Assembly: GCF_001194135.2 (NCBI RefSeq)
Contig: NC_068981.1
Coordinates: 78,578,919-78,630,485, forward strand
Direction of reading: 5' to 3'
DNA: 51,567 bases
From: Octopus bimaculoides
Taxonomy: Eukaryota
Of this stretch, positions 69 to 51,567 are shown in pieces; the stretch's first letter is position 1; each line of letters opens with the position of its first letter. A program made the translations under genes and the position numbers. Below the pieces are notes generated by a model. The model did not search any database. It saw nothing but the letters and a program-made list of their open reading frames with translations, and had not been told where the DNA came from.

Positions 69-115
<47 letters not shown>

Positions 116-120
116 TACAT

Positions 121-350
121 ATCATCATCATCATCATCGTTTAATGTCCACTTTCCATGCTAGCATGGGTTGGACGATTTGACTGAGGACTGGTGAAACC
201 AGATGGCTACACCAGGCTCCAATCTGATTTGGCAGAGTTTCTACAGCTGGATGCCCTTCCTAACGCCAACCACTCCGAGAGTGTAGTGGGTGCTTTTACG
301 TGCTACCGGCACGAGGGTTAGTCACGCGGTACTGGCAACGACCTCGCTCT
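121..350 (-). mobile_element. SINE family 1 copy (RTE-like 3' tail ending in (GAT)n)
   Basis: Reverse complement of the motif aggaagggcatccagctgtagaaactctgccaaatcag...ccaacccatgctagcatggaaag...gttaaacgatgatgat, which recurs many times in the window. Confidence 0.85.
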
Positions 351-8589: not shown

Positions 8590-9275
8590 AAACAAGCAAG
8601 CCACATAGAAACATCTCCTTCATCAGCTGCCACCATTAAAACACCGGCATTTCGAAGAATGAAGGCAGTACGCATCATTGAAATGGTTCTTCCCACGAAC
8701 ACAAATTAAATCATTTTTGTGGAGGATAGTGGCGGACGGAAAACAAGACAGGAAAATGAAACGGTGAATAAATATATATATATATAATACACACACACAC
8801 ACTCGTTACCAAGCAAGGTAATATTCCTCCACTCTTAAGCACACAAATAGCACAACGGCCATGATTTAATATTGCAAACAATACTACCTATATGAGGGTG
8901 GAGTCTGTTCACAGTGGTGAGATGATGTCTAGGAAAGGAGATGTAAACACACACACACATATACACACAACCATTCACATATATGATAAGCTTCTTTCAA
9001 TTTCTATTTACCAAATTTTCTTGCAACATTTTGGTTGGTTGTCTGGCGTTAGGAAGGGCATCCAGCTGTAGAAACTCTGCCAAATTAGATTGGAGCCTGG
9101 TGTAGCCATCCGGTTGCACCAGTCCTCAGTCAAATCGTCCAACCCATGCTAGCATGGAAAGCGGACGTTAAACGATGATGATGATGATGATGATATATAT
9201 ATATATTCGAAATGCCGGTGTTAAAACGGGGGTAGCTGATGAAGTAGAATGTTCTCTATGTGGCTTGTGTGTTTT
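8590..9275. repeat. Inverted pair of a short repeat (about 8590-8654 and 9207-9275)
   Basis: caagccacatagaaacatctccttcatcagctgcc..aaaacaccggcatttcga is the reverse complement of tcgaaatgccggtgtt..agctgatgaag..ctatgtggcttg. Confidence 0.8.
9041..9192 (+). mobile_element. SINE family 1, 3' portion, well preserved
   Basis: Near-identical to the reverse complement of 121-270. Ends in (GAT)n. Confidence 0.85.
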
Positions 9276-13464: not shown

Positions 13465-14733
13465 TCAGGTTGTGTAAAAAGTAAGCAACGTTTTGAACCA
13501 TGAAGAGTTTGTGCCAGATTTTTGCAGAGTTTGGAATTTTTTTTAAGCACCTATTTTTCTATTGTCTGATAATACAAACATAGACTCACCCAAGTATATC
13601 ATTAAATTAACATTGATGTTTTTTGCATTGTTGTTACAATAATCTGAAATGAAAATATCAAAGCGCAACATTCAAGCAATTTTGCTATTCAACTTCAAAA
13701 AAGGGCATAACACAACTGAAACTGCTCATGATATCGAGATGTTTGGTGATGAAATGACCACTGAGTGGTCAGCTCAAAAATGGTTTAAACGATTTCGCAA
13801 TGGAGACCTGAGCCCTGAAGATTGTGAGCATAGTGGACGCCCATCTGTCATCGATGATGGTCAATCAAAGACCATCATTGAGAAAGATCCATGTAAAACC
13901 ACTCAAGAACTGACAAAAGAACTTCAACTTAGCCAGAAAACTGCCTGCAATCATTTGCATGCGATCAGAAAATCAAAAAAGCTTGACAATTGGATACCAC
14001 ACTATTTGAATGAAAATCAGAAAATGCGCAGATATGAAATTTGCTTGTCACTTCTTCTCCGTAACCAGACTGATCCATTTCTCAACTGTATTGTAGCTTG
14101 CAATGAAAAGTGGATTCTGTACAATGATAAAAAAATGTTCTTCGCAGTGGTTGGACAAAAATGACGCACCAAAAACCTTTCCTAAACCTGAACTCTTCAA
14201 AAAGAAGGTTATGGTGACTGTTTGGTGGTGTACTGCTGGACTCATCCGCTATAACTTCTTAAAACCCGGAAAAACTATTACTGCAGAAACATATTGCCAT
14301 GAAATTGTCAAAATGAATGAAAAACTGCTACTCCTCCACCCCAGACTGGCCAACAGAAGAGGGCCAATCATTCTTCATGAGAATGCTCGACCACACATTT
14401 CACTATTGATGCTTCAGAAGTTGAGGGAACTTGGCTACGAAGTTCTTCCCCAGACCTTTCTTCTACCGACTACCACTTTTTCAAGCACCTTGATGGTTTC
14501 CCTTGAGAGAAGGAGTTAAAAAATCAAACCAATGCTGAAAGTGCATTCAAAGAGTTTATCAGCTCCAGAACTCCAGCTTTCTATGTTACTGAAATAAACA
14601 AACTTGTAACTCGTTGGCAAAAATGTGTTGATTGTAATGGCACTTATTTCGATGAATAAAATTTCTGCATTGTTGAAATATATTCTGATGAATTTCATGT
14701 TTCAAAACGTTACTTACTTTTTACTAAGCCTGA
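13465..14733 (+). mobile_element. Full-length (1269 bp) non-functional mariner transposon with Hsmar1/cecropia-like TIRs
   Basis: TA at 13463-13464 and 14734-14735. Left TIR tcaggttgtgtaaaaagtaagcaacgttttgaa pairs with right TIR ttcaaaacgttacttactttttactaagcctga. Encloses the transposase pseudogene. Confidence 0.95.
13649..14659 (+). pseudogene. Mariner (DD34D) transposase pseudogene
   Basis: HTH N-terminus, WIPHYL (WVPHEL motif), CNEKW (first D>N), HENARPH (second D>E), PDLSSTDYHFF, and C-terminus RWQKCVDCNGTYFDE*. Frameshifts near 14130 and 14450 and an in-frame stop. Confidence 0.92.
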
Positions 14734-22945: not shown

Positions 22946-24229
22946 TATTATCCTTTATTTCAGTCCCAAAGTTGTTAATTATTTTCTGTCCATATAAATT
23001 TAATCAAGCAATTAAAAACTGAAGAATTAAGAGTTTCACTTTTGTTCTTACAGCAATATGCAACTCTTTGCTGCGCCAAGTAGGAGCAGTTAATATATAA
23101 GATATAGCAATCAACTTTCATTGATTAATTCTGACCTGCCATTAAAATGAAGTCTTCATCATCATCCTCATTCTAAATCTGCTTTCCATGCCAGCATGTG
23201 TTAGAGTAGTCATCACTGTTTAAGTCAGTTCTCTTTCAGAGTTACTGCCCTTCTAAATAGATTGGGTGACCGTGTCTTGCTCATACATTCTATTTTTTTG
23301 TCTTGATTTTTACCACTGGATGGTCTTTCTTGCACCAATCTCCCTACAGACCATGGTTAGTGAGATTTCATGTCATTACTAGCACTATATAAGACGGTGA
23401 GCTGGTAAAATCATTAGCATGCCAAACAAAATGCTTAGTGGCAGACAATTCATCTGTCTTTACATTATAAGTTCAAATTCCTCCAAGGTCAACTTTGCCT
23501 TTCATCCTTTCAAAGTCGATAAAATAAGTACCAGTTAAGCACTGAGGTCAATGCAATTGACTTACACCCTCCTCCAGAATTGCTGACCTTGTGCCAAAAT
23601 TTGAAATCATTATAAGCACTATATGGTCCACGACACTCTGTGTTGTCTCTACTCATTTACCAAATACCTTACTGAATTACTGTGGCACCAGTGCTAGTGA
23701 AATTGTGTTATTTCTCTCAAGACTAAAATTCTTCTACTACTCTTTCTATGCACATTTTATATTTTTTATGTACTGCTTCAACACACACAGATTTACAGCA
23801 TTTCCTAAATTATTATTATTATTATTATTGTCTTCTATTAGTACATTTTCTAAGATTATGGAGATATTGTGGTAAGCAAATAGGCCTGTTGTAAGGTATA
23901 AAAACATTTGTTTGAATGTTTCTAAATTTCAACAGCACTTTAATATTCTTATCTACTGTACCATTAGTAGGGATGTTATCACAGCAAATACATGTTGAAA
24001 GAAAGGAGTTTTTATTTGCATTAAAACTCATAGAGTTCAGACCTATCTTTAATAAGCATTAATACAAACATTTAATGCCTGAAGACCATGTTAAGATATT
24101 ACAATAAAACACGAGGCAACATTAAAATCTTGACAAATTAAAATTAATAATCTGGTCAATCTCGACTATATTTTGTTTCAGTGGTCATCGTCCTCACATC
24201 ATCAATATCACCACCACCACAACAACAAC

Positions 24230-25880: not shown

Positions 25881-26130
25881 ATCATCATCATCATCATCAT
25901 CATCATCGTTTAACGTCCGCTTTCCATGCTAGCATGGGTTGGACGATTTGACTGAGGACTGGTGAAACCAGATGGCTACACCAGGCTTCAATCTGATTTG
26001 GCAGAGTTTCTACAGCTGGATGCCCTTCCTAACGCCAACCATTCCGAGAGTGTAGTGGGTGCTTTTACATGCCACCGGCACGAAGGCCAGTCAGGCAGTA
26101 CTAAGCAATGGCCACGCTCAAAATGGCAAC
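25881..26130 (-). mobile_element. SINE family 1, young copy, antisense to sdk
   Basis: Near-identical to 121-350 over about 200 bp. Confidence 0.88.
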
Positions 26131-41184: not shown

Positions 41185-42082
41185 AGTAATAATGATTCTT
41201 TCTACTATAGGCACAAGTCTGGAAATTTTGTAGGAGAGGGCTAGTCAATTACATAGACCATTGTCAGTGCTTAACTGGCACTTGTTTTATCAAGCCTTTT
41301 TGGATGAAATGCAAAGTTGACCTTGATGGAATTTGAACTCAGAACAGAAAGGCAGAAGAAACACCACTAAGTATTTTGTCTTTCTTGCTAATGATTTTGC
41401 CTGCTCACTGCCTTAATGATAATAACAACAACAACAACTGTTTCTAACATAGGCTGAAGGCCTGAAATTTTGGGGAGGAGAATAGCCATTTATATCAATT
41501 ATTCATTTCAAATACTTGCCCTTCTTTATATATATAGATATACGCATATCTATAAATATATAAAGGGGTTTTGATTGGTCATAGTATTGCTGTATGAGAA
41601 CAAAATTAAAATTTCTCCTGTCTGTCTCACGTTTTCTTTTATTCTCTGTTACAGTATCAGACACAATGACTTGTCATATTTGTTCAAGATCTTTATTTAC
41701 AATCTGAGTTCAGATTCTGTGAAGTGCAACTTTGCTATTCACCCTACCCATGAAATATTGGGATCGCTATAATCAAAGCTATTCCCTTCCTCCAACTTTC
41801 AGGTCTTGTCTTTATATTAGAAATTATTATTATTTTTATTATTACAATTATTATTATTATTATTATTGTTATTATTATACAGCAGAATTGTTAGCATGCT
41901 GGACGAGATACTTAACAGTATTTCACCCCTTACTACATTCTGAGTTCAAATTCTGCCGAGGTCAACTTTGTCTTTCATCCTTTCAAGGTCAATAAAATAA
42001 GTACCAGTTGAAAACTGGGATCAATGTAATCAACTCATCCCCTCCCCCAAAAAACTGTTGCCCTTGTGGCAAAATTTGAAAC

Positions 42083-42118
<36 letters not shown>

Positions 42119-42367: not shown

Positions 42368-43695
42368 GATCAGTGGAATGGCTGAATCATTATAATGTTA
42401 TAAAATGCCTCACAGAATTTGGCTCTTGATGTTTAGAGTTCAAATCCTGCTGGGGTCAACTTTGCCTTTTATCCCTTTGTTGGGGTCAATAAAATAAAGA
42501 ACCAGTTAAATGCTAAAGTTGACAATATTGACTAACCCCAACCCTCAAAATTACTGGCCTTGTGCCAAAATTTGAAACAATTATTATTATTATTATTATT
42601 ATTATGAAAGCAGGGAAGTGGTAGAAACAGTTGAGTGCCATACTTTACAAAATACCTCAAAATATTTCTTTCTTTATATTCTGAGTTCAAATACTGCCAG
42701 GCAAACACTGCCTTTCAATCTTCAAAAGTACCAGAAGAGTATTCAGGATCCAATCAAATACATTTCTACACTACAACCCTTATGAAATTATTACTATTTC
42801 AAAGATTGGCAAAATTGGTAGAATGTTGGGCAAAATATTTTGTGGTATTTAGTTGCACTCATTTACATTTTCTGTTCAAATTTCACCAAAGTTTTTTTTT
42901 TTTTTTTTTTTTTTTGCTTTCCATCCTTCTGGGGGGGGGGGGGCAATAAAATGAAGTACTGGTCAAATACTGAGGTCAATTAAATACTGTTGCCTCTAAA
43001 ATTTGTAGCCTTTTGCCTATGTCAAAATGCTTGGCAGCATTTCTTCCGACTTCATGTTTTGAGTTCAAATACCACCTTGGTTGACTTTGCCTTTCATCCT
43101 TTCGAGGTTGATAAAAAAAGCGCCAGTTGAACCCTGGGGTTGATGTAATTGACTTACCCTTCCTCTGAAATTGGTGGCCTTGTGCCAAAATGTGAAATCA
43201 TCATCATCATTATTATTATTATTAAAGAATCACTAGAGTGTTGAAAAAATGTATTGTAGTATTTCTTTCAGCTCTGCACATTCTGGGTTCAAATCCCACT
43301 GTGGTCAACTTTGTTTTCAATACAATAAAGTAACAGTCAAGTACTGTGGTCAGTGGTTATCACTAACTCCTTTCCGTCAAAATTACTGACCTCGTGCTTA
43401 AATATTTGAAGCCATCATTGTCCTTATTTGCTTCCACATTTGATAGAATGATGTAATAGTCAAGTGCTGGATCGATATGATCAACTAACCCCTGCCCAAT
43501 CAATTTCAGGCTTTGTGCCTATATTAGAAACAATTTTCTGACACTTTATGTTCTGAGTTCTTTTCCTGCCGGGGCCAACTTTGCTGTTCATTCTTTCAGG
43601 GTTGATAAAATGAAATACCAGTCAAGTACTGGATTGATGGTTTTGATTGAGCCCCCATCCCCTCAAAATTGATGGCCATGTGCCTAAATCAGAGA

Positions 43696-44269: not shown

Positions 44270-45262
44270 GCTGCCATCATCATCATCATCATCAATGTAA
44301 AAAACTAAGTTTCCTTATCATTCAGTTTCAATTATTAGGGCAGTGGAAACAATTAGAAAATCAGGTTTGGCTATTTCAAAATACAAATGTTCCTGAAATA
44401 CACTACATTAAGAGAAGTGCTGCTACCATCTACAAGTGAATACAGTATCAGATTCATATCTTCTTTCATATTTCATTACTGATAATGTTCTTAGTTAAGA
44501 TAGATACTTCCTTTGTTCGTGTTAGTCAATAAAATCATCATAAATCCTGCCAGTTTCAACTTTGCCTTTCATCTCCTCAAAGTCAAAAGAAAATTATAAT
44601 CACTTACAAACTGAGTCAATTCACCTATCAATAACTATTTATATTTCAATACTGATTTATCATGAGTACAATTTTTATGGTGGTGGAGTAGCATTGACTA
44701 GAGTTGAGTTCTTGAATGGACGGTGTCCATTAAAATATTTTCTTTCACTTTTTGCCACCGATGTCCCTTGAAAATGTGTGATTGTGCAAGCACAACCATC
44801 TTAACGGTTATCAGAATCATTGGAGCATCAGGTAAAATGCTTAGTGGCATTCCTTCCAAATCTTTACATTCTGAGTTCAAATTCCACCAAGGTCAACTTT
44901 GCCTTTCATCATTTCAGGATCAATAAAATAAGTGCTAGATAAGCACTTGTTGGCGGAGAATGGAGTCAATGTAAGAGACTGGCCTCCTCTCCTTAAAATT
45001 GCTGGCCTTGTGCTAAAATTTGAACGTATTATTATTATTATTATTATGGTGGTGAGCTGGCAGGATCATTAGCACACCAGGCAAAACGCTTAGTGGTATT
45101 TTGTCTGTCTTTACATTCTGAGTTCAAATTCCGCCAAGGTCAATTTTGTTGTTCATCCTTTCAGGGTCGATGAAATAAGTACCAGTTGAGTCCTGGGGTC
45201 AATGTAATTGACTTACCCCCAGTCCTGAAATTGCTGGTCTTGTGCCAAAATTTCAAACCATG

Positions 45263-45316
<54 letters not shown>

Positions 45317-45530: not shown

Positions 45531-47079
45531 TTACTATTATTATTATTATTATGAAATGTAAAATGAGAGGAATGTTCTTGACAATCTGGATTTTCTCAGA
45601 ACTGTTTCATTTCTGATGCTTGTTGTCATAACAACAATATGAACAAACATTACAGCTTCCAAGTTCTTCATTTCAATATGTTGATTTTTTGTTCCTATAG
45701 AAGAAAAACAAAAACTTCGCTGGAAACATTACAATATCTTACATATTATTTTTTAAATTTATCAACAAATTTTTGTTTTATTTCTGAAATGGCCAAAAAT
45801 GCAATTGTTATATAATCTAATGTGTGTGTGTGTGTGCGTTTGAGAGAGAGAGAGAGAGAGAGAGGTTTGGCAGAAAAAGAATATTGAGAAACAACACAAA
45901 GAATATTTGATCTCTATGGGATTTTTCAAAACCCACCCGCAGAAAGAAAAAGAAAAGCAAAAGGTGGGGGCTGGAATATCTTCATGATTGCTTGACATAC
46001 TATAAATAGTAGCTATTTTACCCCCAAATCACAAACTAATGTCTTAAAAATGTGAGAAACATAGGANNNNNNNNNNNNNNNNNNNNNNNNNNNNNNNNNN
46101 NNNNNNNNNNNNNNNNNNNNNNNNNNNNNNNNNNNNNNNNNNNNNNNNNNNNNNNNNNNNNNNNNNNNNNNNNNNNNNNNNNNNNNNNNNNNNNNNNNNN
46201 NNNNNNNNNNNNNNNNNNNNNNNNNNNNNNNNNNNNNNNNNNNNNNNNNNNNNNNNNNNNNNNNNNNNNNNNNNNNNNNNNNNNNNNNNNNNNNNNNNNN
46301 NNNNNNNNNNNNNNNNNNNNNNNNNNNNNNNNNNNNNNNNNNNNNNNNNNNNNNNNNNNNNNNNNNNNNNNNNNNNNNNNNNNNNNNNNNNNNNNNNNNN
46401 NNNNNNNNNNNNNNNNNNNNNNNNNNNNNNNNNNNNNNNNNNNNNNNNNNNNNNNNNNNNNNNNNNNNNNNNNNNNNNNNNNNNNNNNNNNNNNNNNNNN
46501 NNNNNNNNNNNNNNNNNNNNNNNNNNNNNNNNNNNNNNNNNNNNNNNNNNNNNNNNNNNNNNNNNNNNNNNNNNNNNNNNNNNNNNNNNNNNNNNNNNNN
46601 NNNNNNNNNNNNNNNNNNNNNNNNNNNNNNNNNNNNNNNNNNNNNNNNNNNNNNNNNNNNNNNNNNNNNNNNNNNNNNNNNNNNNNNNNNNNNNNNNNNN
46701 NNNNNNNNNNNNNNNNNNNNNNNNNNNNNNNNNNNNNNNNNNNNNNNNNNNNNNNNNNNNNNNNNNNNNNNNNNNNNNNNNNNNNNNNNNNNNNNNNNNN
46801 NNNNNNNNNNNNNNNNNNNNNNNNNNNNNNNNNNNNNNNNNNNNNNNNNNNNNNNNNNNNNNNNNNNNNNNNNNNNNNNNNNNNNNNNNNNNNNNNNNNN
46901 NNNNNNNNNNNNNNNNNNNNNNNNNNNNNNNNNNNNNNNNNNNNNNNNNNNNNNNNNNNNNNNNNNNNNNNNNNNNNNNNNNNNNNNNNNNNNNNNNNNN
47001 NNNNATATATATATATATATGTATGTATATATATATATATATGTATGTATATATATATACATATGTGTGTATATATATA

Positions 47080-47676
47080 TGAGGGGAAGTAAAAAATTAT
47101 CCGCACTTTCGCCATAACATTATTGTCAAACTGCCTTCTGACCATGCATGCTTATAGTTGGTACTGTTGTGGTCATGTGATCAAAGTTTGATCCTGATCC
47201 TGCCATTTTTCTTTGTCTTTACAATGTAAGCATGACCGCTCCACTAGCAATGTGCTTCAAAGAAGAACAAAAATCAGTGATCCGAGAGATTGTAAAGGTG
47301 AACTGTTTCGTCATTACCATCTCTTGAGTTTGCTGAATCTTTTCATCAGTAGTGGAAGTTAGCAGGCGTCCTGCTTCATCTTTGTGCATCACGCTTGTCT
47401 GGCCACTTCTAAATTTCTCGATCCACTCGTACACATTTCTATGCAGTTGTGCACTGTACCCATATTGTCCTAATAACTTCCGATGAATTTCAGCACCTGA
47501 CACCTTCTGACCAGAGAAATCGGATCACTGCTCTTTGTTCTTTTTTGGTGCACATTGCTAGTGGAGCAGCCATGCTTACATTGTAAATCCAGAAAGAAAA
47601 ATCACATGTGCAGAAGGCATTGTAACAATAATAAAGATATGTTATGGCAAAAATTCAGATAACTTTTGATTTCCAT

Positions 47677-48732: not shown

Positions 48733-50008
48733 CAAAACACAGGCCGATCATGGCTAGAATGTCTTAGATTATAGGTAAATTATATCAACAACATAATAAT
48801 AATTAATGAATTAATAGCAACAAGATCACCCTTAGTTCAACTGTGATCACCATTTTCTGTTTCTGGTTGTGAAAAAAAAAAAAATTGTAATTATTCACGC
48901 CATCTTTCCTGATGCCCACCATCACCACCACCACAACCATCCAACACCATTATAAAAACAAATTTTAAAAAAAAGGAAATCAAAGAAGAAAATAATATCC
49001 TGACCAACAAATTGTTCATTAAAATAACAATAATCCCAATATATAAGACAAAAAAATTAAAAAATACAGAAGCAGTTTAAACTTTTATTTGTAATGCTAA
49101 AATTGTTTTCAAAATAAACTCCTTCTTCCATTCTTGGTATCATGCTTTTTTAAAAAAAAAATCATTTTTTTTTTTTTTTTTNNNNNNNNNNNNNNNNNNN
49201 NNNNNNNNNNNNNNNNNNNNNNNNNNNNNNNNNNNNNNNNNNNNNNNNNNNNNNNNNNNNNNNNNNNNNNNNNNNNNNNNNNNNNNNNNNNNNNNNNNNN
49301 NNNNNNNNNNNNNNNNNNNNNNNNNNNNNNNNNNNNNNNNNNNNNNNNNNNNNNNNNNNNNNNNNNNNNNNNNNNNNNNNNNNNNNNNNNNNNNNNNNNN
49401 NNNNNNNNNNNNNNNNNNNNNNNNNNNNNNNNNNNNNNNNNNNNNNNNNNNNNNNNNNNNNNNNNNNNNNNNNNNNNNNNNNNNNNNNNNNNNNNNNNNN
49501 NNNNNNNNNNNNNNNNNNNNNNNNNNNNNNNNNNNNNNNNNNNNNNNNNNNNNNNNNNNNNNNNNNNNNNNNNNGCTTCTCCAACATACTGAAAATTTAG
49601 AAATAGCAGTCAAAGAACTACTGATTCCAAACTACAAATTTTTTTCGAGTTATATAGACACTTTCAAATTTATTTGAATATTGTGCTGAAGATCGGAATA
49701 GAGTACCTTCATACTCTTAACCGTGAAACGTCGTACACGATTAACTAAAGGCAGGTTTGTTTTTGCTTTTCTCTTCTGTGTGTGCCATAAATATCGTCAT
49801 CCGTTAGAGAAAAAAATTTGTAGTTTGGAATCAGTAGTTCTTTGACTGCTATTTTTAAACCGTATGAGATGAATAACAGTAAGATTTATTGTAGCATTAA
49901 ATTGTATGTCTGTGTGTGAGTGAATGCGACATAATAAAACACATTATAAGACTGGCCGTCATGTAAAGAGAAAAGAGTGTGTGTAAGTAATTCATGTATG
50001 TGGGTACG

Positions 50009-50474
50009 AGAGATACACAGTATTGAATAGAGTCAGTAACACGTATAAGGATTGAAGATACCAGTTCTTAGAGTACACAGTGGTAAGTGTCTGCAACACC
50101 ATCGTACAACTACGAACTACAAGCATCGCCCCCGACGTAGCCAGCAGCAACACGACTCTACGACTACCAGCATCGCCGCCAGCGTCAACATGACTCTACA
50201 CGTACACAAGCTACCAACAGCTAACTGCAGCATTTCTCTTCGATTCTGTTTGTGCGATTTCTTCACCGCGATAATTAACAGCAAGAATTTAGCCTACGAA
50301 GAACATCTGTATTCAACCCGGCTTGGCATAGAAGCCCTAACATCACAACTAGTGATCGCTTTGCCACACACGCTTTAACTTCTTATATGCAGACACTTAC
50401 CACTGTGTACTCTAAGAACTGGTATCTTCAATCCTTATACGTGTTACTGACTCTATTCAATACTGTGTATCTCT
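50009..50474. repeat. Perfect 87-bp inverted repeat (50009-50095 and 50388-50474) with a 292-bp spacer
   Basis: Checked base by base: the arms are exact reverse complements and pairing stops at both edges. No TSD seen. Confidence 0.97.
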
Positions 50475-50882
50475 TTTGTTTAATTGTTCTGTTGTACAAC
50501 CAACATCTGCTGCGTACACCAAATGGGAATCTCTACTCGTCCTACTTTCCGTGTAAATCATAACATTTCTGTTATGATTCCTCATGGAATCGACTTGACT
50601 CATATTGTTGCACAGTGAACAGGGCTTACCACTCTTGCGTGCAGAAACTCCAATGTTAGTTTTCTTGGAATCAGAAGTAGAGGTTAATAGTTTGAAACGA
50701 GGATATTTTTCCGCAACATGCTGGTAACTTACATGTAACACTTTTGAAATGCCAGCGAAATTTCGGTGCCAGTTACTCACTAATGGAATTCTGTCACATA
50801 TTGTACTTTGTTTGCTACAATTATGCGTGAAAGTTTGACTTTCCTTACTAATCTTAGCTATGTCATTTGCAATTTCCTTTAA
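50457..50882 (-). CDS. Candidate terminal coding exon of an unidentified convergent gene (141 stop-free codons, possibly extending to 50950 across a 1-nt frameshift)
   Basis: The open frame LKEIANDIAKISKESQTFTHNCSKQ...SNWHRNFAG...KRDTQY* is longer than the ORF-track call and is neither microsatellite- nor SINE-derived. No family recognised. Confidence 0.4.
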   Translation of the reverse strand, partial: LKEIANDIAKISKESQTFTHNCSKQSTICDRIPLVSNWHRNFAGISKVLHVSYQHVAEKYPRFKLLTSTSDSKKTNIGVSARKSGKPCSLCNNMSQVDSMRNHNRNVMIYTESRTSRDSHLVYAADVGCTTEQLNKRDTQY

Positions 50883-51019
50883 TCATGATTCACTGCAACC
50901 GTGTTTGACATAATGGTGTACAAAAGCATTTGTATGTTTCCAGTAGTTCCCTATATCAATACAAATCCATTTTATCCTCAAAAATTGGCATTTCAGATTT
51001 GACCGAATTATATGATGTG

Positions 51020-51215
51020 GATGAGCGAAGTGGCGGTGGAGGTAAATGTGATTCCAGAAAACTTAACTTTTGTGTCCAAGAATTCAACGCTAGTAGACTT
51101 GCCTTTCATTTTTTCGGGCTCATTAAATAAGTACCTGCCGAGCACTGAGGTCGATGTAATCGACTTATCCTCCCCCACGAAATTACTGATCTTGTGCCAA
51201 AACGTGAAACCAATA
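51020..51215 (+). mobile_element. SINE family 2 copy
   Basis: gacttgcctttcatttt..aaataagtacc..gaggtcgatgtaatcgactta..aaattactgatcttgtgccaaaa. Confidence 0.75.
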
Positions 51216-51567
51216 TTAATAGTTTTAGTCTGGTTTGGTAATCAAACATGCGTGTCTGAATTTATTATTATGTCTACAAAGCAATCTGTCAGTCAATCCT
51301 TTTGTAAGTCACTCGTTTGGAATTTTTTGTCTATCAAATATCTCACGGTATTAAATTTTAGGTATTGTGGAACTCAGCTGGTTACTTTATTTGGCACCTC
51401 GAGTGCCGCCAAGCTCTCACCGCCCTCAGTCAGGCGGGCAGTGCGATCGGTAGTAGATCCACTCTAGCGTTCTATAGAGGGTTAGTGGGAGAAAAGTGCG
51501 ACGACGTTCTCGGGGTAACTCTAGGCGTCGAGGATAATCAGCTAAGCAGTCTGTTCAGGAGAACTTT

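What the first reader, a model, noticed from the sequence alone, without database searches (positions are those of the whole stretch)
50009..50474. Perfect 87-bp inverted repeat that sequesters the stop codon of a minus-strand reading frame
Seen: exact 87-bp arms, a 292-bp CpG-rich spacer, no TSD and no match to other repeats in the window. One arm contains the last codons and TGA (50459-50457) of the candidate ORF, then an in-frame TAG 15 codons later. The arms also contain a GTAAGT donor-like motif. Inference: a transcript would fold into a perfect duplex covering the stop, a substrate for Dicer or ADAR (recoding or stop read-through; UGA has a disfavoured 5' G, UAG is a favoured context). 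Alternatives are a very recent inversion or template switch, a new MITE, or an assembly artefact. A gap lies about 430 bp away.
Basis: partly seen in the sequence, partly recalled or inferred. Interest (0 to 1): 0.7.

Follow-up and report, generated by a model that had tools for sequence, protein, structure and literature searches.

The report
Young inverted duplication beside dead retroelement
The perfect 87-bp inverted repeat is really in the sequence, but the "reading frame" whose stop codon it covers is only a decayed fragment of a Penelope-like retrotransposon that breaks off where the repeat begins, so this is most likely a very recent local inverted duplication (or an assembly error) in junk DNA, not a recoding device.

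Summary
The arms are 50009-50095 and 50388-50474, 87 nt and 100% complementary, with a 292-nt spacer. There is no TSD and no other copy in the window. The minus-strand TGA lies at 50459-50457, a TAG follows 15 codons later, GTAAGT lies in the arms, and a gap ends 434 bp away.

The frame (stop-to-stop 50457-50882) is a relic of the linker and GIY-YIG endonuclease region of a multi-copy retroelement, probably Penelope-like. Three other copies are 71-89% identical to the window down to 50472-50474, the outer edge of the right arm. They continue for 400-480 bp that the window lacks. The TGA is simply the first stop in unrelated sequence.

A second near-perfect repeat (46 exact, 50 of 51) lies 149 bp upstream, 21 bp from the gap.

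The most likely cause is a young local inverted duplication (template switch or micro-inversion with a duplicated breakpoint), at about 0.5. An assembly artefact (about 0.3) could not be excluded, because no independent copy of the locus could be reached. A MITE or a functional hairpin RNA is less likely. Interest is low.

The parts
50009..50095 (.). Left arm of the perfect inverted repeat (87 nt). Holds GTAAGT at 50083-50088.
   Evidence: the repeat finder I1; blastn self-match 100% over 87 nt; exact-match scan.
50096..50387 (.). Unique 292-nt spacer: GC 47%, 19 CpG (o/e 1.31), no tandem repeat, not self-complementary. Its 108-aa mechanical ORF has no homologues.
   Evidence: No match in JGI metagenome contigs or prokaryote genomes.
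50388..50474 (.). Right arm of the perfect inverted repeat (87 nt). Holds the TGA (50459-50457) and the TAG 15 codons later on the minus strand.
50475..51093 (-). Decayed relic of a multi-copy retroelement, covering the linker and the start of the GIY-YIG endonuclease domain; probably Penelope-like. It is cut off on its 3' side at the edge of the right arm; the first three arm bases (AGA, 50474-50472) also match one relative, so the breakpoint is ambiguous by 0-3 bp.
   Evidence: phmmer found 8 relatives. Relative P0010 has Pfam GIY-YIG at 31.3 bits against a cut-off of 22.6; P0008 has a weak GIY-YIG hit. tblastn end points are 50472/50469. blastn: L001 77% over 51093-50506, L002/L003 81-89% to 50472, L004 to 50474. 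Alignments.
50457..50882 (-). It is the open stretch of the retroelement relic plus six codons and the TGA read from the arm.
   Evidence: 24 ORFs of at least 107 codons exist in the window.
49596..49859 (.). Second near-perfect inverted repeat: arms 49596-49646 and 49809-49859 (46 nt exact, 50 of 51 overall), 162-nt spacer. It is unique in the window and starts 21 bp after the gap.
   Evidence: The Rfam MIR821 'hit' here is only a generic hairpin match (38.7 bits against a gathering score of 249).
49182..49574 (.). Assembly gap (393 N) that separates the CpG-depleted 49 kb from the last contig, which holds both repeats.

Best explanation
The repeat is a very young, local inverted duplication in non-coding, transposon-derived DNA.

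Shown:
- An old Penelope-like retroelement copy, about 20% diverged from its relatives, sits on the minus strand.
- It breaks off inside its GIY-YIG endonuclease domain at 50475.
- There it abuts an unrelated 466-bp unit made of an 87-bp segment, a 292-bp unique segment and the exact reverse complement of the first segment.

Inferred:
- One arm was copied from the other in a single event.
- This happened either by a replication template switch to the complementary strand, or by a micro-inversion of the spacer made with staggered breaks, which duplicates the staggered 87 bp in inverted orientation.
- The event is recent enough that no substitution has yet occurred (0 of 87, which bounds arm divergence below about 3.4% at 95%).
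- The neighbouring 46/51-bp repeat is a second product of the same local instability, or of the same multi-step event.

Consequences: the minus-strand TGA is merely the first stop after the junction. Any transcript through the region would form an 87-bp perfect duplex, but nothing indicates that this is used.
For: - The repeat is exact and unique in the window.
- Three independent copies of the retroelement (L001, L002/L003, L004) match the window up to 50472-50474 and then continue for 400-480 bp. Those continuations are homologous to each other but absent from the whole window.
- Arm, spacer (either orientation) and left flank score no better against those continuations than dinucleotide shuffles do. 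The outer edge of the right arm is therefore a true breakpoint, and the repeat is not part of the element.
- The arm's first bases, AGA, also match what the closest relative (L002) has at that position. This is a 0-3 bp junction ambiguity compatible with microhomology-mediated joining.
- Arms at 0% divergence against about 20% for the retroelement relic mean the duplication is much younger than the element.
- An older, unique repeat of the same geometry (arms about 81 nt, 87% identical, spacer 234, no TSD) lies at 47205-47602. A diverged repeat cannot be an assembly artefact, so such structures arise naturally in this genome and then decay.
- Template-switch mutations are documented to create perfect hairpins in one step, with events of 28 to 83 bases described (PMC10710096; PMC5453318).
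Against: - No independent reads, second assembly or orthologous locus could be reached. All 12 contig look-ups are used and none found this locus. The structure rests on one draft assembly.
- Both perfect repeats lie in one short contig next to a gap, which also fits an artefact.
- Three junctions show no microhomology and the fourth shows 0-3 bp, less than is typical of template switching.
- In the simplest switch-and-return model the retroelement should resume after the 87-bp copy. It does not, so an extra truncation or deletion has to be assumed.
- An 87-nt copy made 292 nt away is at the upper end of described short template switches.
Confidence: 0.5

Rival explanations
1. Assembly or gap-closing artefact. 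The true genome has one arm (or a different join), and the inverted second copy was introduced when short contigs were stitched together next to the gap.
For: - The window is a gapped short-read-style scaffold with five N runs.
- Its only two complex, near-perfect, close-range inverted repeats both lie within 900 bp of the gap at 49182-49574, in the last 2-kb contig.
- Perfect identity is what an artefact gives.
- The retroelement breaks off exactly at the arm edge, as a false join would.
- Penelope-like insertions are noted to cause problems in short-read assemblies (PMC8557442).
- The total span of 466 bp is about the size of a paired-end insert (my inference).
Against: - All four junctions must exist in reads for a graph assembler to output them. 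Real inverted repeats themselves break short-read contigs, so closeness to a gap is expected either way (inference).
- A diverged repeat of the same geometry at 47205-47602 shows such structures are natural here.
- No adapter or linker sequence lies at the junctions. The 9-mer AGATCGGAA in the neighbouring spacer is only an 11-of-13 match to the Illumina adapter and is not at a junction.
Confidence: 0.3
2. A miniature inverted-repeat or foldback transposon of 466 bp with 87-bp terminal inverted repeats, inserted next to or into the retroelement relic.
For: - The geometry (long terminal inverted repeats around a short non-coding core) fits.
- The unit is unrelated to its flank.
- Octopus genomes hold many TIR and MITE families (PMC13282606).
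Against: - There is no target-site duplication of any length.
- The retroelement does not resume on the other side of the unit, nor anywhere in the window.
- There is no second copy in the 51.5 kb or in 17 kb of related loci. This is weak evidence.
- The termini do not resemble known superfamily ends (my own knowledge, not tested).
- Perfect 87-bp arms would require an extremely recent insertion.
Confidence: 0.12
3. A functional hairpin-RNA locus. The region is transcribed and the 87-bp duplex is an ADAR hyper-editing target or a Dicer substrate giving endogenous siRNAs; it may recode or read through the covered stop codon.
For: - The fold is extremely stable in silico.
- The region is not CpG-depleted, so it is probably unmethylated in the germline.
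- Donor-like GTAAGT motifs are present, and a good acceptor (cttcttatatgcag|) lies at 50392.
- Cephalopods edit RNA heavily (established knowledge).
- Template-switch hairpins can become miRNA genes (PMC10710096).
Against: - The 'stop codon' belongs to a dead transposon fragment with no start, a broken domain and no conservation beyond the junction. There is nothing to recode.
- No Rfam family matches.
- Perfect arms show no sign of selection, only youth.
- No expression data are available.
Confidence: 0.05

Closest known systems
Short-range template-switch mutations (four-point model of Löytynoja & Goldman; hairpins born in one step, Mönttinen et al.)
   Same: A reverse-complement copy of a nearby unique sequence gives a perfect stem in an otherwise unrelated context. 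It needs no transposon features and sits within a few hundred bp of its source.
   Different: The 87-nt copy with a 292-nt loop is at or beyond the upper sizes described (28-83 nt). The sequence after the copy is not the expected continuation of the interrupted retroelement. The ancestral state is unknown.
Inversions made by staggered breaks, which leave inverted duplications at the breakpoints (described for Drosophila inversions; my own knowledge, not checked in the library)
   Same: It predicts exactly arm - inverted segment - inverted copy of the arm, with blunt junctions lacking microhomology, as seen at three of the four junctions.
   Different: The known cases invert kilobases to megabases; here the inverted piece would be only 292 bp. 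The orientation of the spacer in the ancestor cannot be tested.
Penelope-like element insertion architecture (pseudo-LTRs, inverted 5'-truncated copy next to the element)
   Same: A Penelope-like relic lies directly beside an inverted repeat, and such elements are known to generate inverted-repeat structures and assembly trouble (PMC8557442).
   Different: In those structures the arms are element sequence and the truncation is at the 5' end. Here the arms and spacer are unrelated to the element and the element is truncated at its 3' side.
Inverted SINE/Alu-type pairs that form dsRNA substrates for ADAR
   Same: Close inverted copies would form long dsRNA if transcribed.
   Different: Those arms are independent insertions of a dispersed repeat and are diverged; such pairs in this window are 70-87% identical. 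These arms are single-copy and identical.

Membership tests
Penelope-like retroelement (applies to the ORF, not to the repeat) | GIY-YIG endonuclease domain | tested here: inconclusive
   The window ORF has no Pfam hit of its own. It aligns (E 2e-12) to P0010, whose residues 116-174 hit PF01541 above the cut-off. Its closest relative, P0008, hits weakly (E 0.027). The window keeps only about the first 26 residues of the domain, with an 8-residue deletion.
Penelope-like retroelement (applies to the ORF, not to the repeat) | Cys-rich linker (CX2-5CxxC-like) upstream of GIY-YIG | tested here: inconclusive
   The window reads GKPCSLCNNM and P0010 reads GRPCRLCSHMC at the aligned position. The motif is described in PMC8557442. 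The third Cys is lost in the window.
Penelope-like retroelement (applies to the ORF, not to the repeat) | Reverse transcriptase domain upstream of the endonuclease | tested here: not met
   No RVT hit in the upstream ORF (51008-51241, minus strand) or in the relatives scanned for it (P0007-P0009). The relic is interrupted by a dispersed repeat at 51099-51227 and the window ends at 51567, so the RT part may lie outside it.
Penelope-like retroelement (applies to the ORF, not to the repeat) | Hammerhead ribozyme motif / pseudo-LTR | tested here: not met
   No hammerhead or other Rfam match at E up to 1 in 49575-51567. No direct repeat of element sequence.
Penelope-like retroelement (applies to the ORF, not to the repeat) | Dispersed multi-copy family with decayed copies | tested here: met
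   8 diverged fragmentary relatives, 7 from Logan read assemblies and 1 from an ENA genome. DNA identity is 71-89%.
MITE / foldback DNA transposon (applies to the 466-bp unit) | Terminal inverted repeats | tested here: met
   87-nt perfect arms.
MITE / foldback DNA transposon (applies to the 466-bp unit) | Target-site duplication flanking the element | tested here: not met
   The flanks are ...gggtacg| and |tttgttt, with no duplication of 2-10 bp.
MITE / foldback DNA transposon (applies to the 466-bp unit) | Many copies in the genome | not testable with these tools
   No second copy in the window or the fetched loci. The genome itself is not searchable here.
Template-switch / inverted-duplication mutation | Exact reverse-complement copy of a nearby unique sequence | tested here: met
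Template-switch / inverted-duplication mutation | Ancestral or orthologous allele lacking the copy | not testable with these tools
   No orthologous or independent sequence could be retrieved.
Template-switch / inverted-duplication mutation | Microhomology at the switch points | tested here: inconclusive
   0 bp at three junctions. 0-3 bp (AGA) at the retroelement/arm junction, judged against relative L002.
ADAR / Dicer hairpin-RNA substrate | Long, near-perfect intramolecular dsRNA | tested here: met
   -242 kcal/mol, z = -17, with all 87 pairs formed in silico.
ADAR / Dicer hairpin-RNA substrate | Transcription, A-to-G changes or phased small RNAs | not testable with these tools
   No expression data are reachable.

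The most novel reading that the evidence does not exclude
The repeat is real and was born in one step by template switching in a germline-unmethylated stretch beside a dead retroelement. It is transcribed, so octopus neurons or germ cells carry a brand-new 87-bp perfect hairpin RNA that is hyper-edited by ADAR or diced into siRNAs. That would be a hairpin-RNA gene caught at birth, with a second one 149 bp away.
Probability: 0.06. Interest if true: 0.45.

Novelty: new member of a known kind. Interest (0 to 1): 0.15.

Why it matters
As it stands it matters little. It is a structural quirk in transposon-derived, non-coding DNA of a draft assembly.

It has two practical uses:
- It flags a spot where the assembly should be checked. 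Two perfect inverted repeats next to a gap either caused the gap or were caused by closing it.
- It is a caution for sequence-only scans. Long open frames in this genome are often transposon relics (24 frames of at least 107 codons in 51 kb), so a 'stop codon inside a hairpin' needs a gene before it needs a mechanism.

If the repeat is real and transcribed, it would be a clean example of how a perfect dsRNA substrate arises in one mutational step in an animal that edits RNA heavily.

Tried and rejected
1. Independent copies of the locus. Eight look-ups of window ORFs, six of them on ORFs in and around the repeat, including M-start versions and two that span a whole arm with both its junctions. 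None is on record.
2. Exact arm and spacer patterns in JGI metagenome contigs and in prokaryote genomes. No matches, so there is no sign of contamination and no second copy.
3. The spacer as coding sequence. Its 108-aa ORF has no homologue among 5.8 billion proteins and only a sub-threshold Pfam match.
4. The arm as the continuation of the retroelement. MAFFT lined part of it up with the relatives, but local alignment scores are within the dinucleotide-shuffle range for the arm, the spacer in both orientations and the left flank. Rejected.
5. Penelope-style inverted 5'-truncated copy as the source of the repeat. Rejected, because the arms are not element sequence and the truncation is 3'.
6. 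Twin-priming or retrocopy idea, prompted by an A18 run on the minus strand at the gap edge. The retroelement does not resume beyond it, so it is unsupported.
7. Known RNA families. Only a meaningless long-hairpin match to MIR821 on the neighbouring repeat. No tRNA genes were found in the window.
8. A profile of the ORF family against PDB sequences. Nothing significant.
9. Illumina adapter in the neighbouring spacer. AGATCGGAAtAGa is an 11-of-13 match that does not continue, is not at a junction, and is about what chance gives over the whole window.
10. SRA run identifiers of the related contigs in the paper library. No hits, so the species of those runs stays unknown.

Full report
**1. The observation**

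The window is a gapped draft scaffold with five N runs, 35% GC, many microsatellites and dispersed repeats. A decayed mariner copy has its best protein match in Octopus vulgaris at 73% identity.

The inverted repeat is exactly as described. The arms are 50009-50095 and 50388-50474, 87 nt and 100% complementary, with 292 nt between them. Apart from the neighbouring 46-nt match described below, the longest other exact, non-simple inverted match within 1.5 kb anywhere in the window is 28 nt, so chance is excluded. Arm and spacer have no other copy in the window.

There is no target-site duplication, and similarity does not continue beyond either end of the arms. The minus-strand frame ends ...AAA AGA GAT ACA CAG TAT TGA at 50459-50457, and TAG is the 15th codon after it. 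GTAAGT is present in both arms. The gap 49182-49574 ends 434 bp to the left.

**2.

- A second repeat sits 149 bp to the left, at 49596-49646 / 49809-49859. It has 46 nt exact, 50 of 51 overall, and a spacer of 162 nt. It starts 21 bp after the gap. These two are the only complex, near-perfect, close-range inverted repeats in the whole window.
- The 'CpG-rich' spacer is rich only by contrast. The 49 kb before the gap has CpG observed/expected 0.22, while the whole contig after the gap has 0.91. That is about the value in related sequences from other data sets, 0.74-0.92.
- The likely reading, by inference, is a germline-methylated gene body to the left and ordinary unmethylated DNA to the right.

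**3. The reading frame is a dead transposon**

The frame is 141 codons stop-to-stop (50457-50882), or 107 codons from the first GTG. Frames of this length are common here: 24 of at least 107 codons in the window. It has no Pfam match.

An exhaustive phmmer search of 1.84 billion representative proteins found eight relatives, with E from 6.5e-12 to 3e-5. All are unnamed singletons. Seven come from Logan read assemblies and one from an ENA genome contig.

One relative, P0010, carries a GIY-YIG nuclease domain above Pfam's cut-off: PF01541, 31.3 bits against 22.6, residues 116-174. The closest relative at the junction, P0008, hits the same domain weakly.

The alignment shows the window frame running through a conserved linker (IPLV.NWHRNF..., then a Cys-containing stretch GKPCSLC) into the first strand of the GIY-YIG core (HLVYAA...VGCTTEQLNKR). 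An 8-residue deletion lies inside the core.

A GIY-YIG endonuclease behind a Cys-rich linker, in a dispersed and decayed family, is the signature of endonuclease-bearing Penelope-like elements (PMC8557442). These elements are a known repeat class in octopus, with an old burst at about 0.2 divergence (PMC13282606). I did not find the reverse transcriptase part in the window, so 'Penelope-like' is probable, not proven.

**4. The element breaks off exactly where the repeat starts**

I fetched the DNA of four related copies.

| Copy | Identity to window | Extent in window |
|---|---|---|
| L001 | 77-78% | 51093 down to 50506 |
| L002 / L003 | 81-89% | down to 50472 |
| L004 | 71-91% | down to 50474 |

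Protein-level matches end at 50472 or 50469, and the right arm starts at 50474.

The other copies go on for another 400-480 bp. Those parts are homologous to one another, for example 70% over 362 bp between L001 and L002. Nothing like them exists in the arm, the spacer in either orientation, the left flank, or anywhere else in the window (all scores lie within the dinucleotide-shuffle range).

So 50474|50475 is a genuine breakpoint between an old retroelement and unrelated sequence. The six codons and the TGA that close the frame are read from the unrelated side. The only junction ambiguity is that the arm's first three bases, AGA, are also what the closest relative has there. That is 0-3 bp of possible microhomology.

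**5. What the repeat is**

The 466-bp unit is not part of the retroelement, has no coding or RNA-family signal and no transposon hallmarks beyond the arms themselves. The arms are identical while the neighbouring relic is about 20% diverged from its relatives. Zero differences in 87 sites puts arm divergence below about 3.4% at 95% confidence.

An older single-copy repeat of the same geometry lies 2.4 kb upstream, at 47205-47285 / 47520-47602 (87% identical, spacer 234, no TSD). This shows that such local inverted duplications occur naturally here and then decay.

The best-supported reading is therefore a recent local inverted duplication. Two mechanisms give this product:
- A replication template switch to the complementary strand. 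This is documented to create perfect hairpins in one event, with 28- and 83-base examples (PMC10710096 and PMC5453318).
- A micro-inversion of the 292-bp segment made with staggered breaks, which duplicates the staggered stretch in inverted orientation and needs no microhomology. This fits the blunt junctions.

I cannot tell the two apart without the ancestral state. The simplest switch-and-return version is disfavoured, because the retroelement does not resume after the 87-bp copy.

**6. The main rival**

Both perfect repeats lie in one short contig beside a gap in a short-read-style scaffold, and the retroelement ends exactly at an arm edge. A false join would look the same. Against this:
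- Real inverted repeats are themselves a cause of contig breaks.
- All four junctions must have been present in reads.
- No linker or adapter sequence lies at the junctions.

I tried hard to reach independent data. Eight of the twelve contig look-ups went on window ORFs, six in and around the repeat, including two that span a whole arm with both its junctions. I also ran exact-pattern scans of public contig collections. Nothing was found. I put the artefact at about 0.3.

**7. Function**

Either strand folds into a complete 87-bp duplex: the minus strand gives -242 kcal/mol, z = -17. A plus-strand donor (GTG|GTAAGT at 50082|50083) and a good acceptor (cttcttatatgcag| at 50392) could in principle define a 310-nt intron.

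None of this can be tested here. With no gene to recode, the ADAR read-through idea loses its object. A role as a newborn hairpin-RNA locus is possible but unsupported (about 0.05).

**8. Verdict**

This is an ordinary kind of feature, a young inverted duplication next to a transposon relic, or an assembly error, and interest is low.

Noticed in passing
window 1-49181 versus 49575-51567: Sharp change in CpG depletion across the gap: observed/expected 0.22 over the first 49 kb against 0.91 in the last contig. GpC is about 1.0 in both. This suggests a heavily germline-methylated domain (perhaps a large gene body) ending at or inside the gap. Related transposon copies from other data sets have 0.74-0.92.
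   Followed up: partly
window 49596-49646 / 49809-49859: Second near-perfect inverted repeat (46 nt exact, 50 of 51 overall, spacer 162), unique in the window, 21 bp from the gap and 149 bp from the 87-bp repeat. Its spacer holds AGATCGGAAtAGa, an 11-of-13 match to the Illumina adapter start, probably by chance.
   Followed up: partly
window 47205-47285 / 47520-47602: Older single-copy inverted repeat of the same geometry (arms about 81 nt, 87% identical, spacer 234, no target-site duplication), about 200 bp from the gap 46067-47004.
   Followed up: partly
window 51099-51227: Dispersed repeat (probably a SINE) with at least eight copies elsewhere in the window at 72-82% identity (for example 23495-23613, 41968-42099, 43057-43200, 45152-45275). 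It abuts or interrupts the upstream part of the retroelement relic.
   Followed up: no
window 13649-14519 (+): Decayed mariner/Mos1-type transposase in two frames (Pfam HTH_48 and Transposase_1). The best protein match is an Octopus vulgaris 'SETMAR-like' protein at 73% identity.
   Followed up: partly
window 111-268, 9044-9202, 25887-26037: Three copies of a roughly 155-bp repeat at 95-97% identity, the youngest dispersed family seen in the window.
   Followed up: no
window 51380-51567: GC- and CpG-rich stretch at the window's end with no Rfam match above noise (MEG8_1, 20 bits against a gathering score of 70). Nature unknown; it runs off the window.
   Followed up: no
L001 173-826 and L004 816-1385: The gene caller behind the protein collection read these transposon relics through in-frame TGA codons ('translates_to_query: no'). 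Some of the 'proteins' that match the window ORF are therefore themselves artefactual read-through ORFs of decayed copies.
   Followed up: no
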